The position numbers and the translations under genes are program-made. From Piromyces finnis finn (taxonomy: Eukaryota; Fungi; Neocallimastigomycota), in contig MCFH01000083.1 of the NCBI GenBank assembly GCA_002104945.1, positions 104,387 to 168,386 of the forward strand: a stretch of 64,000 bases of DNA. Direction: 5' to 3'. Below, piece after piece: positions 1 through 58,250 of this stretch. The stretch's first letter is position 1. Each line of letters opens with the position of its first letter. The notes beneath the pieces are model-generated. The model made no database searches and was not told the origin of the DNA. It saw only the letters and a list, made by a program, of their open reading frames with translations.

Positions 1-433
1 TAAATATAGTTAAAATTTAAATCAATTTATGAAATAATGGAAAGGATTTATAATACAATATTAAAAGAAAATTTTATTTATCATTTTATATATTTTATAT
101 CAAACTTTGAATTAAATTTTAAAAACAAAGCATATTACAATTAACATATCGCTAATTTATAATTAATTAATTAATTAATTAATTTATTTATTAAAAGTAT
201 TTACAATTAAATAATTCTTTAATATAGTATTAAGTTAAAAAATAGGTAATTTATAATATATAAATTATTATATTATAAATTTATAGTAAATATATTCTAT
301 GTAATAAAATATAAAATAGGTTATATTTTAAAGTTAATGTTTTTTTTTTCTTTATTTATTAAATTATGAAATTCATATATAAATATATAGATATTTTTAA
401 TAAATTATAAATTATATTTAATGAGGATTTTTT

Positions 434-691
434 TTAAATAATCTTTTTACAATTTAAACAATAATATACTAGCGTAGCTTCTTCGTCACTACGACGAATT
501 TGTATACGTCTAATATCAATGTTGTTACTGTGACATCTTTTACAAAGTAACGAACTATTTGATATATTATTTATTTTATTTTCTAGTAATTCCAATTCTT
601 GTTGCTCCTTTATTCTATCTTCCTTAAACAAAGAGGATTCTTCAAAAAATTTATCTAATGAATTAATTGATAAATCAGCCATTGCTATCAA
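434..691 (-). CDS. TFIIS/Rpb9/Rpc11-type C-terminal zinc-ribbon protein (RNA cleavage/elongation factor); first ATG at 682
   Basis: CKRC...QIRRSDEE...YYCLNC matches the TFIIS_C ribbon (CxxC...QTRSADE...CxxC) with the acidic hairpin. Confidence 0.85.
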   Translation of the reverse strand: MIAMADLSINSLDKFFEESSLFKEDRIKEQQELELLENKINNISNSSLLCKRCHSNNIDIRRIQIRRSDEEATLVYYCLNCKKII

Positions 692-1064
692 ATAAAATTA
701 AATAGTTTAAATATAAAGTATAAAAAAAGATTTTGGTTAAAATATTAGTTATTAAATTATCTCTATTTTTATTTATGGTAATCTAAATAAAACAATAAAG
801 ATTTATATTATAATGAAATAAAAGATATTACAAATATTTTATGTATTTTATAAAGGTAATTAACTTAATATAAATTATAATAAAGATTTATAAATTAAAT
901 GATATTTTTCAATTTTTAATTTAACAAATATTTAAATATTTATTATCATTTTAGAAAAAAAATTTTTTTTTTTTTATTTTTTATTTATTTTTTTTTTTTT
1001 TTTTGAATTAATTTTAATGTTTTAAATAATTATATTAAATATTCAAAAATAAAATATATTAATA

Positions 1065-1073
1065 TAAAATGAT
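1065..1073 (+). promoter_or_regulatory. TAAAATGAT candidate early-promoter motif (representative copy; see findings for the others)
   Basis: The same 9-mer, or TAAATTGAT, lies in sense orientation ~45-165 bp upstream of 11 element genes. Confidence 0.6.
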
Positions 1074-1173
1074 ATTTATACAAGTTTAAAATAATAATAC
1101 TAAAATTTTCTGTATTATAATTGTTAATGTATTGTTAGTAAAATACAATTTTTTATTAGATAAACTTTAAAAA

Positions 1174-54021: not shown

Positions 54022-54557
54022 ACTATTATTTAATATTCTATCTATTTTATTATATTATATTATATAATATTATATAATATTATATTATATTATATTTATT
54101 AATATTATATTGTATTTATTAATATTATATAAATATAGTTAAAATTTAAATCAATTTATGAAATAATGGAAAGGATTTATAATACAATATTAAAAGAAAA
54201 TTTTATTTATCATTTTATATATTTTATATCAAACTTTGAATTAAATTTTAAAAACAAAGCATATTACAATTAACATATCGCTAATTTATAATTAATTAAT
54301 TAATTAATTAATTTATTAAAAGTATTTACAATTAAATAATTCTTTAATATAGTATTAAGTTAAAAAATAGGTAATTTATAATATATAAATTATTATATTA
54401 TAAATTTATAGTAAATATATTCTATGTAATAAAATATAAAATAGGTTATATTTTAAAGTTAATGTTTTTTTTTCTTTATTTATTAAATTATGAAATTCAT
54501 ATATAAATATATAGATATTTTTAATAAATTATAAATTATATTTAATGAGGATTTTTT

Positions 54558-54815
54558 TTAAATAATCTTTTTACAATTTAAACAATAATATACTAGCGTA
54601 GCTTCTTCGTCACTACGACGAATTTGTATACGTCTAATATCAATGTTGTTACTGTGACATCTTTTACAAAGTAACGAACTATTTGATATATTATTTATTT
54701 TATTTTCTAGTAATTCCAATTCTTGTTGCTCCTTTATTCTATCTTCCTTAAACAAAGAGGATTCTTCAAAAAATTTATCTAATGAATTAATTGATAAATC
54801 AGCCATTGCTATCAA
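54558..54815 (-). CDS. TFIIS/Rpb9-type zinc-ribbon protein, second copy
   Basis: Protein identical to 434..691. Confidence 0.85.
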   Translation of the reverse strand: MIAMADLSINSLDKFFEESSLFKEDRIKEQQELELLENKINNISNSSLLCKRCHSNNIDIRRIQIRRSDEEATLVYYCLNCKKII

Positions 54816-55294
54816 ATAAAATTAAATAGTTTAAATATAAAGTATAGAAAAAGATTTTGGTTAAAATATTAGTTATTAAATTATCTCTATTTTTATTTAT
54901 GGTAATCTAAATAAAACAATAAAGATTTATATTATAATGAAATAAAAGATATTACAAATATTTTATGTATTTTATAAAGGTAATTAACTTAATATAAATT
55001 ATAATAAAGATTTATAAATTAAATGATATTTTTCAATTTTTAATTTAACAAATATTTAAATATTTATTATCATTTTAGAAAAAAATTTTTTTTTTTTATT
55101 TTTTATTTTATTTTTTTTTTTTTTTGAATTAATTTTAATGTTTTAAATAATTATATTAAATATTCAAAAATAAAATATATTAATATAAAATGATATTTAT
55201 ACAAGTTTAAAATAATAATACTAAAATTTTCTGTATTATAATTGTTAATGTATTGTTAGTAAAATACAATTTTTTATTAGATAAACTTTAAAAA

Positions 55295-57493
55295 ATGGAT
55301 ATCATTCAATTAATTAATAATTTATTAAGTAATAACAAATGCCTATCTAATGAATATGAAATAATAATAAATAATAAAAAATTTTCATTTTTTGAAGGAA
55401 TCAATATAATTGACTGTAATAAACTTTCCAAAGATCAATATGCTGTTAAATGTAAAGATAATATAAAAGTTGACGCAAATTATTCATCATTTTTTTCTCT
55501 TTTTAACATATTGGAAAGAAAATCAAAAGAGAAAATCTTCAAATATAATTTCGATTTAAAGGATACAACAAAAACAAGCTTTTATATTCCGGTCAATATT
55601 TCTATACATACTTTTAAAGAAGTGTATAATAAATTAATAAAATTAGATTTGCCGAATACTTGCCAATATGTCATTGGTTTTATTGGAGGATTACATTATT
55701 ATCATTACTTTAATAATGATTGCTACACCGGATCATATAATTATAATCAAAATTTAATTAAAATGGATAGGGTTAAAGATATTGAAGATTTAGATAATTA
55801 TATAATTATAAGATGTTGTCATGATTGTATAAAAATCACCCATGATAAAATTGTGTTTTCCGAAAGAGATACGTATGACAATATTATTTGTAGAATATTG
55901 CCATGTTTTAATTACACAAATGAACAAATACTAATTAGATTTACACCTTGTGATGCTTCTTTTATCTATCCAATATCTATAAACTTTCAATTATTTGATC
56001 TAATGCTCTATGAAAATGGTTTTTATCCTTATATATATGCCAATGAAAGCGATAGTTTAATAAAGTGCCAAGAAAAATTAGTGTATACAATGAATATTCT
56101 TAATAAATCCATTAACATGTTGCTTTACAACAAATACAAGCAATTTACAGAAACTATCCAATTTCAAGATTTAGAGTGGTATATGTACTCGGCTGTTAAA
56201 AAAGTGTTGAAATACCTATATTTATTTTATATTGACTTCCATATACGTTATTATCAAAGAAATGAACCTTTCAGTACTCCAATTAAAATAAATTACAATA
56301 GATTATTTGGAAAATATTATACTAGATATTTTAATAATAAAGATAAAGTATTGCCAGTGATTGCTGATAAGGATTACTGCGTCGAAAATAATATTCCGTA
56401 TGTTCAATGGAATAGCAATTACTATAGAGCTCCGGAAAATTCGGGATATAAAATAATTCTTTCAACAAATAAAAAATATACAGATAATAACGGAATTCCT
56501 AAATGTGTTAAAGTCATAAGAAAGTATAAGGAAAAAAGGGAAGTTGTCTACTTTAACATAACCCATGAACTAAACGAACATTGTAAAGGCCAATTCCCTT
56601 CAAATTTATTTATATCCTATGGCTTTGAGTTACTGCATTTATACCGTGTATATTTCGATATCCCGGAAATATCTAGTAAATTTACCACTTGTCCTAAATG
56701 CAACACCTACATTAGCATTCCAAGTCAAAAAGACTTGGTAAATACCATAAAAGACTTACTTCATCACAACCAATTAAAAATACTAAATAAAAATTACAGT
56801 TTCAATGATGTTAACATACTTTCTTTTTCTATTGATAACGATATGAATGTATATCCGTATTGCGTTTTTAACCACGTTTACAGTTTTAATCCTTTCATTC
56901 CTTTTTTAATAGTTATATTAAACACTTCTAAATTATATACATTTCCTAATTATCGATTTGAATTTGTGGTAGGCCCAAATGACAATTGGTTCAATTTTAA
57001 TGATGATCTTGTACAGGCTATATTTTCTATGTATAAAAAAAACTCTATTTTAATTATGGATAGTACTAAATTAAATAAATGCATTAAGCAATACGTCTTA
57101 GATAATGACACTGCAACCACTACTATTTTAATAGCAGAAAAAGAATATCCAAATGAAAATTTTTATCTATGGAGATCTATTTATTCAGAAGTAATACCTA
57201 AGATACCAATAATAAAGGATGCCGAAGAATTTCACAATACCCTGCCATCATTTTCATTTCTATGTAAAACGATTAAAAGTATATCTGCTTTTCATTACAA
57301 TGCATTGGATGAAAATAATGAAAAATTCATGGTTTATGGTGTATGGGAAAATGAAATTTATTACCCATGTAAAGCATCATTGGAGATAGTAAAACCGGAT
57401 AGCATTAATAAACCTTACTTATTAATAAAAAGAAATTTAGATGGAACTGTTTATTCATTTACTAAAGATAGTTCTAATTTTATAGTTTTTTAA
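55295..57493 (+). CDS. Probable VETF large subunit, second copy
   Basis: Protein identical to 1174..3372; two synonymous differences seen (56356, 56629). Confidence 0.6.
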   Translation: MDIIQLINNLLSNNKCLSNEYEIIINNKKFSFFEGINIIDCNKLSKDQYAVKCKDNIKVDANYSSFFSLFNILERKSKEKIFKYNFDLKDTTKTSFYIPVNISIHTFKEVYNKLIKLDLPNTCQYVIGFIGGLHYYHYFNNDCYTGSYNYNQNLIKMDRVKDIEDLDNYIIIRCCHDCIKITHDKIVFSERDTYDNIICRILPCFNYTNEQILIRFTPCDASFIYPISINFQLFDLMLYENGFYPYIYANESDSLIKCQEKLVYTMNILNKSINMLLYNKYKQFTETIQFQDLEWYMYSAVKKVLKYLYLFYIDFHIRYYQRNEPFSTPIKINYNRLFGKYYTRYFNNKDKVLPVIADKDYCVENNIPYVQWNSNYYRAPENSGYKIILSTNKKYTDNNGIPKCVKVIRKYKEKREVVYFNITHELNEHCKGQFPSNLFISYGFELLHLYRVYFDIPEISSKFTTCPKCNTYISIPSQKDLVNTIKDLLHHNQLKILNKNYSFNDVNILSFSIDNDMNVYPYCVFNHVYSFNPFIPFLIVILNTSKLYTFPNYRFEFVVGPNDNWFNFNDDLVQAIFSMYKKNSILIMDSTKLNKCIKQYVLDNDTATTTILIAEKEYPNENFYLWRSIYSEVIPKIPIIKDAEEFHNTLPSFSFLCKTIKSISAFHYNALDENNEKFMVYGVWENEIYYPCKASLEIVKPDSINKPYLLIKRNLDGTVYSFTKDSSNFIVF

Positions 57494-58250
57494 TTTAATA
57501 TATGAAAAAAAATTGTAGTTACAAAAAATTTTTAAATTAGAATTTCCTATTTATTTTTAAAATTTATATACTTTGTTTTTTTTTAAATGATATAAATAAT
57601 ATATATATATTTTATTTTATTTTATTATATAAATAGTTATAAACATTAAATTTTGTCTTCAAAAGAATATTAAAAATAAATAAATGAATAAATAAATGAT
57701 ATAATAATTAATAACAAATAATTAATATTTAAATAAATATCAATATTTTTTTGTAAAATTTTATTTAAATTTCTTTTAATATATTCATTGCAGCTATACA
57801 TATAATTAATGATTTTCTCATATTTAAAATAATAAGTTATGTTTTTGAACAAAATTAATTTTTATTATATATTTGTATTAATCCAGTTTTATTAGTTATT
57901 TTATTTTTATTTAATTTTTATTAATTTTATTCTTCATAAACTACTTATACAATAAACTTTTTAATATTTTTAATTTCAAATTAGAGTTTATTATTTTTTT
58001 GAAACTAGCATTAACTATATTTTATTTATAAATGCTAAATAATAATTTTATTTTTTATTTCAAAAAAATTAATAGTATATTTGAATAAAAATATTAATAA
58101 TAATTATTAGAAATCATAATAAATATTTTAAAATTAATTATATAGATAAATAAATTTCATATATTTTAAAATTTTACCACACAATCGAGTGCTTTAAAGT
58201 TTATATATTACACTTTAAACTTGTGATATTAAAAATTTATGAATTTTGGA

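What the first reader, a model, noticed from the sequence alone, without database searches (positions are those of the whole stretch)
1..57730. Capsid-less giant-virus-derived element: minimal replication and early-transcription chassis plus secreted cargo
Seen: if the direct repeat marks the unit, the whole gene inventory lies in this window. It comprises PolB, D5 helicase, UDG, candidate SSB, split Rpb1, Rpb2, TFIIS ribbon, capping enzyme, VETF-L and D6/D11 helicase, four small unknown ORFs and five cargo genes. Established: this is the Nucleocytoviricota early-transcription and replication toolkit, while virion formation needs a jelly-roll capsid, A32 ATPase and VLTF2/3, none of which I recognise. 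Yeast pGKL-type virus-like elements are capsid-less, with their own RNAP, capping enzyme, D6/D11 helicase, SSB and toxin genes, but they use a protein-primed PolB. Inference: this is a separate lineage of reduced, plasmid-like NCLDV derivative (~47.4 kb without retro-insertions) in an anaerobic fungus. It would express its genes in the cytoplasm and carry secreted effectors instead of virion genes.
Basis: partly seen in the sequence, partly recalled or inferred. Interest (0 to 1): 0.95.

Follow-up and report, generated by a model that had tools for sequence, protein, structure and literature searches.

The report
Giant-virus-derived mini-element in gut fungus
The window holds a chromosomally integrated, tandemly repeated and partly broken copy of a small (about 42-47 kb) self-contained DNA element of anaerobic gut fungi. 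The element descends from giant viruses, keeps its own replication and transcription genes plus secreted-protein genes, and has no recognisable capsid genes; intact ring-mapping relatives turn up in many public sequencing runs.

Summary
The window is the last 64 kb of Piromyces finnis contig MCFH01000083.1. It carries a 54.1-kb unit repeated in tandem; the repeat runs at least 10.9 kb left of the window. The unit encodes PolB, D5 helicase, UDG, a two-gene Rpb1, Rpb2, a TFIIS ribbon, a capping enzyme, VETF-L (by fold), a D6/D11-type helicase, five conserved unknown ORFs and four signal-peptide proteins.

The family is already published as endogenous "fundsalphavirus" (Gong et al. 2020). What is new is an intact, gene-dense relative. 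It assembles as 42.3-42.5-kb contigs with different start points in several sequencing runs, so it maps as a ring. That ring holds the same gene set and nothing else. Core and unknown genes show dN/dS of 0.06-0.23. An AAAATGAT motif lies upstream of both core and cargo genes.

No capsid, packaging ATPase or VLTF3 was detected. Several ORFs are still unfolded, so "capsid-less" is likely but not proven.

The window copy is nuclear and decaying. Rpb1 and Rpb2 carry four lesions, and a young Ty3 element has inserted between genes. Episomal and cytoplasmic life remain inference.

The parts
1..3619 (.). Tail of the upstream tandem unit (unit A). It continues at least 10.9 kb left of the window.
   Evidence: 98.5-99% identical to window 43307-57735. 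Homology stops at about 3620 / 57735, in an intergenic spacer.
434..691 (-). TFIIS-type zinc-ribbon ORF (85 aa), unit A copy. The unit B copy is at 54558-54815.
   Evidence: Pfam Zn_ribbon_TFIIS 7.2e-10. An 80-aa orthologue sits in the ring relative. dN/dS 0.06.
1174..3372 (+). VETF-L-like early transcription factor large subunit (732 aa), unit A copy.
   Evidence: AF2 model with pLDDT 65.7. Foldseek top PDB hit is 7amv_K, a 708-residue chain of the poxvirus pre-initiation complex that I take to be VETF-L (3e-6), followed by TBPs. BFVD top hits are early transcription factor large subunits of Tunisvirus, Pithovirus-like viruses, Marseillevirus-like viruses, Solivirus and iridoviruses (3e-14 and weaker).
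3620..57735 (.). One full tandem unit (unit B), 54.1 kb; about 47.4 kb without the two insertions.
3804..5453 (+). Rpb1 C-terminal gene. Broken in this copy by one premature stop. It also has a low-complexity expansion.
   Evidence: Pfam Rpb1_5. It is one 439-aa ORF in the ring relative, covering both window ORFs.
5805..9095 (-). Family B DNA polymerase, 1096 aa, intact.
   Evidence: Pfam DNA_pol_B 1.5e-66 and exonuclease domain 1.2e-20. Exo I, motif A and motif C are present. 100% match to a P. finnis protein.
9167..9607 (-). Conserved unknown ORF u146.
   Evidence: Syntenic next to PolB in L005, L006, L007 and L010. dN/dS 0.20. No family or PDB match.
10015..10599 (+). Conserved unknown ORF u194.
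   Evidence: Syntenic in all copies. dN/dS 0.14. No PDB match with a profile.
11247..13040 (+). D5-type SF3 helicase, 597 aa, intact.
   Evidence: Pfam D5_N. Walker A motif. 92.6% aa identity to the ring relative, dN/dS 0.07.
13243..19460 (+). Nested Ty3/gypsy LTR retrotransposon in an intergenic spacer. Not part of the element.
   Evidence: Gag, protease, RT, RNase H and integrase domains. The 608-bp LTRs are 100% identical.
19785..23645 (-). Rpb2. Broken in this copy by one insertion of a repeat of about 0.5 kb.
   Evidence: Pfam Rpb2_6, Rpb2_7 and Rpb2_3. It is one 1074-aa ORF in the ring relative. The inserted repeat also occurs in L007.
24011..26809 (+). mRNA capping enzyme, 932 aa, intact.
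   Evidence: Methyltransferase domain. Weak match to cap N7-methyltransferase structures. Triphosphatase-type and KxDG guanylyltransferase motifs. 808-aa orthologue in the ring relative.
27289..29451 (+). Rpb1 N-terminal gene (domains 1-5). Broken in this copy by two frame changes.
   Evidence: Pfam Rpb1_1, _2, _3, _4 and _5 spread over three ORFs. It is one 717-aa ORF in the ring relative. The metal-binding motif is present.
30326..30955 (+). Family-1 uracil-DNA glycosylase.
   Evidence: PDB phmmer 2.8e-22. 90% aa identity to the ring relative, dN/dS 0.06.
31437..32090 (+). Secreted repeat protein with a C-terminal chitin-binding (hevein-type) domain, sec217.
   Evidence: Pfam Chitin_bind_1 2.3e-9. 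Signal-peptide-like N-terminus.
32531..36358 (-). Large secreted protein sec1275, fold unknown.
   Evidence: Signal-peptide-like N-terminus. No Pfam or PDB match. AAAATGAT motif 55 nt upstream.
36653..38098 (+). u481, an all-alpha protein of unknown function with no signal peptide.
   Evidence: AF2 pLDDT 85, pTM 0.87, helical. No fold match. The family is confined to anaerobic fungi and gut metagenomes.
38310..44933 (+). Giant secreted protein sec2207 with lectin-like segments.
   Evidence: Signal-peptide-like N-terminus. Weak matches to monocot-lectin-fold proteins. Part of it is similar to the ring relative's 1716-aa B_lectin plus chitin-binding protein.
45527..46246 (+). sec239, a cysteine-rich protein with a signal peptide and a hydrophobic C-terminal tail.
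   Evidence: 50% identical orthologue next to u282 in the ring relative. Homologue in A. robustus L009.
46917..47765 (-). u282, a conserved unknown ORF with a Cys/His cluster.
   Evidence: 77% identical orthologue in the ring relative, dN/dS 0.13. An exhaustive HMMER search finds only this element group.
49132..52572 (+). D6/D11-type SNF2/DEAD helicase, the likely partner of VETF-L; 1146 aa, intact.
   Evidence: Pfam ResIII, DEAD, SNF2-rel_dom and Helicase_C. Motifs I and II present.
   Evidence: 83% identical orthologue in the ring relative, dN/dS 0.10. No Pfam or PDB match of note.
55295..57493 (+). VETF-L-like gene, unit B copy. It is the last gene before the end of the array.
   Evidence: differs from the unit A copy by two synonymous changes.
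57736..64000 (.). Non-element flank that runs to the contig end. GC is 13-18%. It includes a subtilase gene fragment with a chitin-binding domain at 63080-63988.

Best explanation
Shown. The window carries a chromosomally integrated array, longer than one unit, of a self-contained element derived from Nucleocytoviricota of the Pitho-/Marseille-/Iridovirus branch. This is the published 'fundsalphavirus' group. The native form of the element maps as a ring of about 42-47 kb. The ring encodes:
- a DNA replication set: family B polymerase, D5 helicase, UDG;
- a complete early-transcription set: two-gene Rpb1, Rpb2, TFIIS ribbon, VETF-L, a D6/D11-type helicase, and a three-function capping enzyme;
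- five conserved unknown ORFs;
- a variable block of secreted lectin and chitin-binding proteins.
It encodes no recognisable virion genes.

Inferred. The free form persists as a capsid-less, plasmid-like replicon. It transcribes its own genes from an element-specific upstream signal (AAAATGAT). It is passed on within and between hyphae or zoospores. From time to time it integrates into the chromosome as a concatemer. Its secreted cargo acts at the fungal cell surface or on competitors.

The copy in the window is a recent, decaying integration. Rpb1 and Rpb2 carry four lesions in all, and a young Ty3 element sits in a spacer. This copy cannot make its own polymerase.
For: Source and tandem structure:
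-.

Gene identities:
-.

Published family with the same shared genes and the same host species:
- PMC7017919.

Intact relative:
- The VETF-L, D5 and u481-like proteins are each found on 19-36 Logan contigs.
- Contigs of 42,285, 42,384, 42,391 and 42,416 bp from different runs are 99.7-99.8% identical. They start at three different points and lie in both orientations.
- L010 and L017 come from different runs and overlap at 100% identity. Together they close a circle of about 42.41 kb, the same as the contig length. No further gene can therefore be hidden.
- The order VETF-L then Rpb1C across the window's unit junction is the native order in that ring and in paralogue L007.

Selection:
- dN/dS is 0.06-0.23 at dS 0.5-1.4 for all core and unknown ORFs, comparing the window copy with the ring. 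It is 0.10-0.30 for most core genes (0.49 for the Rpb1 C-terminal gene) against a P. finnis paralogue.

Shared promoter-like motif:
- AAAATGAT lies sense-upstream of 9 of 18 ring genes and 10 of 19 window genes. About 1 is expected, and 0 of 300 shuffles reach the observed count. Cargo genes are among them.

Virion module not found:
- No Pfam capsid, A32 or VLTF3 hit.
- The only conserved Walker A motif is that of D5.
- u481 is all-alpha.

Cargo appears not to be needed for the element to persist:
- A variant of about 30 kb lacking most of the cargo block is found in other runs.
Against: - Absence of a capsid is a non-detection. u146, u194, u279, u282, sec1275 and the ring's 723-aa and 1526-aa proteins have not been folded.
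- From my own knowledge, Pithovirus-type virions are not built on an easily recognised jelly-roll capsid.
- A ring-shaped assembly also results from a circularly permuted, terminally redundant packaged genome, or from a chromosomal tandem array collapsed by a short-read assembler.
- I could not see the SRA metadata, read depth or contig ends.
- The left end of the array in P. finnis was not reached.
- The frame changes in Rpb1 could be PacBio indel errors.
- Nothing here shows transcription, cytoplasmic location or secretion.
Confidence: 0.55

Rival explanations
1. It is a true small virus whose virion is simply not recognised. The signal-peptide proteins and some of the five unknown ORFs would be envelope, attachment or core proteins. 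These include the lectin and chitin-binding giants and the membrane-tailed sec239. The ring map would reflect a circular or circularly permuted packaged genome.
For: - The relatives by fold are Pitho-, Marseille- and Iridovirus-type viruses. Their genomes are circular or circularly permuted (my own knowledge).
- The integrated copy is longer than one unit, as a terminally redundant genome would be.
- Chitin-binding and lectin domains would suit attachment to a fungal wall.
- sec239 keeps its position and has a hydrophobic tail.
- All unknown ORFs are under purifying selection.
Against: - There are only about 20 genes.
- No packaging ATPase motif is present.
- No late transcription factor was found.
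- The large secreted genes differ between lineages.
- Those genes are absent from a variant that still recurs in several runs. That is not expected of essential structural genes.
Confidence: 0.25
2. There is no free form. The unit exists only as chromosomal tandem arrays that spread by unequal crossing-over or segmental duplication. Short-read assemblers collapse these arrays into rings.
For: - P. finnis carries a tandem array joined to fungal flank.
- A second P. finnis contig holds two D5 genes.
- One cluster of Neocallimastix VETF-L homologues has 80 member sequences.
Against: - Paralogues within P. finnis differ at dS 0.5-1.0 with dN/dS of about 0.1-0.3. They therefore diverged while their genes were in use, not as idle repeats.
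- The ring copies are gene-dense and unbroken, whereas chromosomal copies carry retrotransposons and lesions.
- Ring contigs break at different points rather than at one fixed junction.
Confidence: 0.13
3. It is an ordinary fossil fragment of a much larger giant virus, as first published. It was later duplicated by the host, and the rest of the virus was lost.
For: - PMC7017919 reads these loci as endogenous NCLDV remnants with stops and frameshifts.
- Copies L005 and L006 are truncated.
Against: - The same inventory closes on itself in a 42.4-kb ring in several runs, with spacers of 100-200 bp and no extra genes.
- Gene order is kept across lineages.
Confidence: 0.07

Closest known systems
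Endogenous 'fundsalphavirus' elements of fungi (Gong, Zhang and Han 2020, Virus Evolution veaa008, PMC7017919)
   Same: - Same host species are listed (P. finnis, A. robustus, Neocallimastix, Piromyces sp. E2).
- Same shared genes: PolB, D5, D6/D11 SNF2 helicase, SAM methyltransferase, RPB2, and RPB1 as N- and C-terminal genes.
- PolB is placed near Pithovirus.
- Retrotransposons are noted nearby.
- The window is a member of this group.
   Different: The paper treats the loci as fragments of past infections. It defines no unit, ends or complete inventory. It does not report:
- the tandem structure;
- the ring-mapping intact relatives;
- VETF-L, TFIIS or UDG;
- the secreted cargo;
- the upstream motif;
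- the lack of a virion module within a closed genome.
Pimascovirales giant viruses (Pithoviridae, Marseilleviridae, Iridoviridae)
   Same: - Replication and early-transcription core genes.
- The VETF-L fold is closest to theirs.
- Circular or circularly permuted genome maps (my own knowledge).
   Different: - Their genomes are roughly 100 kb to over 600 kb, with capsid or other virion proteins and late transcription factors.
- Here the genome is 42-47 kb with about 20 genes, and none of those was detected.
Yeast cytoplasmic linear killer plasmids (pGKL1/pGKL2 type virus-like elements)
   Same: It would work in a similar way (likeness drawn from my own knowledge of these plasmids):
- no capsid;
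- its own reduced RNA polymerase, capping enzyme and helicase;
- its own promoter signal;
- secreted cargo with a chitin-binding part.
   Different: Not a member:
- The polymerase is the Pol-delta/NCLDV type with a D5 helicase, not a protein-primed polymerase (PF03175 absent).
- The map is a ring or tandem array, not a linear molecule with terminal inverted repeats.
- No SSB or toxin or immunity function is shown.
Small relatives of giant viruses in the 35-45 kb range (Yaravirus / mriyavirus type; my own knowledge, not tested here)
   Same: Similar genome size and descent from the same viral realm.
   Different: As far as I know, those keep a jelly-roll capsid protein and a packaging ATPase and lack their own RNA polymerase. 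This element is the reverse.

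Membership tests
Nucleocytoviricota (core gene set) | Family B DNA polymerase of the Pol-delta-like type | tested here: met
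   Pfam PF00136 1.5e-66 and PF03104. Catalytic motifs present.
Nucleocytoviricota (core gene set) | D5-type primase-helicase | tested here: met
   D5_N at the gathering score plus Walker A. No primase domain was detected in the N-terminal 220 residues.
Nucleocytoviricota (core gene set) | Own RNA polymerase large subunits, TFIIS, capping enzyme, VETF-L and D6/D11 helicase | tested here: met
Nucleocytoviricota (core gene set) | Double jelly-roll major capsid protein | tested here: not met
   No Pfam capsid family in any ORF of the window or of the closed ring. The only non-secreted ORF of capsid size (u481) is all-alpha. The other unknown ORFs were not folded, so this is a non-detection.
Nucleocytoviricota (core gene set) | A32-type packaging ATPase | tested here: not met
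   No Pfam hit. The only conserved [AG]x4GK[ST] motif in any ORF of 60 aa or more is that of D5, in both the window unit and the ring loci. One further match, in the window's u481, is absent from the ring orthologue.
Nucleocytoviricota (core gene set) | VLTF3-type late transcription factor | tested here: not met
   No Pfam hit. The Cys/His-bearing u282 has relatives only within this element group. Its fold was not tested.
Fundsalphavirus endogenous elements (PMC7017919) | PolB, D5, D6/D11 helicase, SAM methyltransferase, RPB2 and split RPB1 together in an anaerobic-fungus genome | tested here: met
   The paper's 'RPB5' could not be matched to any ORF here.
Yeast pGKL-type cytoplasmic linear plasmids | Protein-primed family B polymerase with terminal protein | tested here: not met
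   The polymerase matches PF00136 and PF03104, not the protein-primed family. Its nearest non-element relatives are Pol delta.
Yeast pGKL-type cytoplasmic linear plasmids | Linear genome with terminal inverted repeats | tested here: not met
   No long inverted repeats. Tandem direct structure and a ring map in relatives.
Yeast pGKL-type cytoplasmic linear plasmids | Secreted killer toxin with immunity | tested here: inconclusive
   Secreted chitin-binding and lectin-like proteins are present. No toxic domain or immunity gene was identified.
Circular or circularly permuted replicon | Same-length contigs with different start points that close on themselves | tested here: met
   for the 42.4-kb relative. 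The arithmetic rests on overlapping loci. Contig ends and read depth could not be inspected.

The most novel reading that the evidence does not exclude
Anaerobic gut fungi carry a currently active, capsid-less, ring-shaped replicon descended from giant viruses. It would be a 'giant-virus-derived plasmid' with these properties:
- It replicates with its own polymerase and helicase.
- It transcribes and caps its own messages from its own promoter signal.
- It carries an exchangeable block of secreted lectin and chitin-binding proteins, which may give its host a killer-like or surface-remodelling trait.
- It repeatedly seeds the fungal chromosomes with concatemeric copies.
Probability: 0.4. Interest if true: 0.9.

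Novelty: new variant of a known kind. Interest (0 to 1): 0.8.

Why it matters
No DNA virus or virus-like replicon of anaerobic gut fungi has been characterised. The only paper I found on these sequences treats them as fossils. A closed genome of about 42 kb that keeps the whole giant-virus replication and transcription engine, but no recognisable virion genes, would be the smallest and most reduced member of that viral lineage.

It would be an independent parallel to the yeast killer plasmids. It would give a concrete case for how viruses turn into plasmids. It would also make testable the long-standing question of where cytoplasmic plasmid transcription systems come from.

It also matters for annotation. 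P. finnis gene models currently list these genes as fungal 'DNA polymerase delta' and hypothetical proteins.

Tried and rejected
- Exact look-up of the raw PolB, VETF-L and u481 ORFs found nothing, because the deposited gene models differ. I went through homologue ids instead.
- IMG/VR scans with PolB and with the VETF-L alignment found no relative, apart from one 26%-identical PolB on an unrelated giant-virus contig.
- Two metagenome scans gave nothing (u481 alignment) or only a 3.9-kb Rpb2-UDG contig plus an unrelated hit (UDG alignment).
- Sequence searches of the PDB were blank or at noise level for VETF-L (single sequence and profile), u481, u194 (profile), u279 and sec1275.
- Pfam scans of all VETF-L homologues were blank.
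- The fold search for u481 was blank.
- The bacterial promoter and terminator scan is irrelevant here.
- AAAATGAT is not enriched over the whole window (34 found against 26 expected). Only its position and orientation upstream of genes are significant.
- Tandem-repeat scans of the ring found no origin-like array.
- The idea that about 3620 / 57735 is a natural genome end was rejected. The same gene adjacency is continuous in L007 and in the ring.
- The idea that the repeat is an assembly overlap of a circle was rejected. The right copy runs into 6.2 kb of unrelated flank, and the two copies differ.
- Literature searches for run accessions or for later work on this group found nothing.

Full report
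**Source and layout**

A PolB search returns a 100%-identical Piromyces finnis protein. Its gene lies on contig MCFH01000083.1 (168,386 bp, GCA_002104945.1). The window is the last 64,000 bases of that contig, so window x equals record x + 104,386. GC is 13-33%.

**The repeat**

Window 1-3619 matches 54130-57735. The 10.9 kb to the left of the window is locus L002. It aligns to window 43307-54129 at 98.5-99% identity. The structure is therefore a head-to-tail array of at least 1.27 units with a period of about 54.1 kb.

Homology stops in the spacer between the VETF-L-like gene and the Rpb1 C-terminal gene. After it come 6.2 kb of unrelated, very AT-rich flank holding a subtilase fragment with a chitin-binding domain, and then the contig end.

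The two copies differ by only 15 substitutions in about 3,200 aligned codons. The duplication is recent, but it is not an assembly overlap. I could not reach the left end of the array. PolB and D5 homologue lists show only one gene model of each on this contig. Unit A is therefore probably partial.

**Inventory**

Confirmed genes:
- PolB: Pfam hits, and Exo I, motif A and motif C are present.
- D5-type helicase: D5_N plus Walker A.
- Family-1 UDG: PDB 3e-22.
- Rpb2.
- Rpb1 as two separate genes 24 kb apart. This split is a family trait. It is seen in L007 and in the ring relative, and it is reported in PMC7017919.
- An 85-aa TFIIS ribbon: 7e-10.
- A capping enzyme with triphosphatase-type, KxDG and methyltransferase signatures.
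- An SNF2/DEAD helicase of the D6/D11 kind.

The 732-aa ORF in the repeat had no sequence match. An AlphaFold model built on 12 homologues (pLDDT 65.7) matches the 708-residue chain K of the poxvirus pre-initiation complex, which I take to be VETF-L, and then TBPs. Among viral models it matches early transcription factor large subunits of Tunisvirus, Pithovirus-like viruses, Marseillevirus-like viruses, Solivirus, iridoviruses and Orpheovirus. It is VETF-L, and its affinity agrees with the published PolB placement near Pithovirus.

Four proteins (217, 1275, 2207 and 239 aa) have signal-peptide-like N-termini. The 217-aa one ends in a chitin-binding domain. The 239-aa one ends in a hydrophobic tail. 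The 2207-aa one has weak lectin-fold matches.

Five conserved ORFs remain unknown: 146, 194, 279, 282 and 481 aa. Nothing supports an SSB.

**State of this copy**

I compared the window copy with the intact relative described below:
- Three genes are broken: the Rpb1 N-terminal gene (two frame changes), the Rpb1 C-terminal gene (one premature stop), and Rpb2 (one insertion of a repeat of about 0.5 kb that also occurs in L007).
- All other shared genes are single open frames.
- Several carry Asn/Asp/Glu-rich low-complexity expansions. For example, the helicase is 1146 aa against 1006, and the capping enzyme is 932 aa against 808.
- A 6,218-bp Ty3/gypsy element sits in a spacer. It has an intact gag-pol frame and identical 608-bp LTRs.
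- The frame changes could be long-read indel errors. The insertion cannot.

**Relatives in fungal genomes**

The group is published as endogenous 'fundsalphavirus'. P. finnis, A. robustus, Neocallimastix and Piromyces sp. E2 are named, and the shared gene list is the same.

I found further P. finnis copies on contigs of 127, 246, 265, 309, 359 and 422 kb, and on contigs of about 324 and 994 kb. Copies also occur in A. robustus, N. lanati (one on a 3.8-Mb contig), Neocallimastix 'constans' and Piromyces sp. E2.

The block Rpb2 - D5 - u194 - u146 - PolB - Rpb1C - VETF-L keeps its order. Some copies are truncated, or interrupted by another Ty3.

Between the window and paralogue L007, dS is 0.5-1.0 and dN/dS is 0.10-0.30 for most core genes (0.49 for the Rpb1 C-terminal gene). 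The copies therefore diverged while their genes were in use. This points to repeated integration of a living lineage rather than duplication of a fossil.

**The intact ring relative**

The VETF-L homologue P0123 (72% identical) lies on 24-35 contigs of Logan assemblies. The D5 protein lies on 36 and the u481-like protein on 19-21.

The loci are gene-dense, with spacers of 100-200 bp and GC of 23%, and every gene is one open frame. Four contigs of 42,285-42,416 bp come from different runs. They are 99.7-99.8% identical, yet they start at three different points and lie in both orientations.

L010 and L017 come from different runs. They overlap by 1,449 bases at 100% identity in Rpb2. At the other side they meet within one large gene. 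The sum is about 42,411 bp, which equals the contig length. The map is closed.

The ring genes, in order:
1. Rpb2
2. capping enzyme
3. Rpb1N
4. UDG
5. u481-like
6. a 1526-aa protein with a signal peptide
7. a 723-aa protein with a signal peptide
8. a 1716-aa protein with B_lectin and chitin-binding domains
9. sec239-like
10. u282
11. helicase
12. u279-like
13. TFIIS
14. VETF-L
15. Rpb1C
16. PolB
17. u146
18. u194
19. D5

No other ORF of 90 aa or more exists.

The junction order of the window's array (VETF-L then Rpb1C) is simply the native order. The point at about 3620 / 57735 is where this array ends, not a genome terminus.

A variant found in other runs lacks most of the cargo block through one deletion. 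Its contigs of 29.8-30.0 kb fit a closed circle of about 30.2 kb.

The ring's PolB is 99.7% identical to an ENA metagenome protein. Many other full-length VETF-L homologues (44-67% identical) occur in gut-type metagenomes.

**Selection and signals**

Between the window copy and the ring, every core gene and every small unknown ORF has dN/dS of 0.06-0.23 at dS 0.5-1.4. sec239 and u481 are faster, at 0.53 and 0.60.

The octamer AAAATGAT lies in sense orientation within 200 nt upstream of 9 of 18 ring genes and 10 of 19 window genes. About one is expected, and 0 of 300 dinucleotide shuffles reach the observed number. In the compact ring it lies mostly 43-103 nt from the ATG. It precedes the cargo genes sec1275, sec2207 and sec239 as well as core genes. 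The cargo therefore belongs to the element's own expression system.

**Search for a virion module**

- No ORF of the window or of the ring hits a capsid, A32 or VLTF3 family.
- The only conserved P-loop is that of D5.
- u481 is the one non-secreted ORF of capsid size. It folds with high confidence (pLDDT 85) into an all-alpha protein with no known match.
- u282 has relatives only inside this group.
'Capsid-less' is the likeliest reading, not a proven one.

**Mechanism**

Shown: a closed gene set of about 20 genes with replication, transcription, capping and secreted cargo; ring or tandem topology; purifying selection; and repeated chromosomal integration followed by decay.

Inferred: the free form is a capsid-less replicon that transcribes itself through VETF-L and the helicase, which would recognise the upstream motif. 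A reduced polymerase would be built on Rpb1 and Rpb2. It would spread vertically or through cell fusion.

The rivals are a small virus with an unrecognised virion, purely chromosomal arrays, and a plain fossil of a larger virus. They are weighed in their own sections of this report.

**Comparison with known systems**

By membership it is a fundsalphavirus element and a reduced offshoot of the Pitho-/Marseille-/Iridovirus branch.

By way of working it most resembles the yeast cytoplasmic killer plasmids. It fails their defining features, namely a protein-primed polymerase and terminal inverted repeats.

- I could not see the SRA metadata, read depth or whole Logan contigs.
- Tables printed by my scripts and tools show alignment bounds from which places of interruptions can be worked out. 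My first notebook entry lists the Rpb1 and Rpb2 ORF pieces by coordinate.
- One search used short generic catalytic-motif patterns that I wrote from general knowledge.

Noticed in passing
window 13243-19460: A Ty3/gypsy retrotransposon with an intact 1530-aa gag-pol frame and two 608-bp LTRs that are 100% identical. It is a very young insertion, probably younger than the tandem duplication, since the copies differ by about 0.7% overall.
   Followed up: partly
window, within the Rpb2 gene 19785-23645; also L007: A short repeat of about 0.5 kb interrupts Rpb2. An 88%-identical copy sits inside a Ty3 element in P. finnis contig 69. It is unrelated to the LTR of the window's Ty3. It may be a solo LTR or a small non-autonomous element.
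   Followed up: partly
window 3804-5453, 19785-23645, 27289-29451: All four lesions of this copy fall in the two RNA polymerase large-subunit genes, which make up about a quarter of the conserved coding sequence. This could be chance, sequencing error in homopolymers, or selection against an active viral polymerase in the nucleus.
   Followed up: no
window 10618-10808: About nine head-to-tail copies of a 20-nt A/T-rich unit lie between u194 and D5. The ring relative has only a 176-bp spacer there and no such array.
   Followed up: partly
L011 (SRR14695932 contig of 29,954 bp); P0186, P0190: A natural deletion variant of the ring lacks most of the secreted-cargo block. It recurs in several assemblies at about 30 kb. 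This suggests the cargo is not needed for the element to persist.
   Followed up: partly
L009 (A. robustus MCFG01000230.1): Three tandem paralogues of u481 lie with a sec239-like gene, a u194 fragment and an LRR gene, away from any PolB. These element families also exist as scattered or expanded gene clusters.
   Followed up: partly
window PolB, helicase, capping enzyme and Rpb1C genes: The chromosomal copy has long Asn/Asp/Glu-rich low-complexity inserts that the ring relative lacks. The helicase is 1146 aa against 1006, the capping enzyme 932 against 808, and PolB 1096 against 1033.
   Followed up: no
window 38310-44933, residues about 1115-1231: Weak similarity (E 0.004-0.017) to monocot-lectin-fold proteins, including the lectin-like bacteriocin putidacin L1. 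The ring's 1716-aa counterpart has B_lectin and chitin-binding domains.
   Followed up: partly
P0130 (Neocallimastix sp. 'constans', 56.6-kb contig): One 90%-identity cluster of VETF-L homologues has 80 member sequences. This hints at a very high copy number of the element in that genome.
   Followed up: no
window 57736-64000: The flank is markedly more AT-rich (GC 13-18%) than the element. It ends in a subtilase fragment with the same hevein-type chitin-binding domain found on the element's cargo proteins.
   Followed up: no
P. finnis annotation (P0001-P0003, P0121, P0139, P0181): Public gene models label the element's PolB as 'DNA polymerase delta catalytic subunit'. They also splice out low-complexity stretches as introns, so proteome-based studies will count these as fungal genes.
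   Followed up: no
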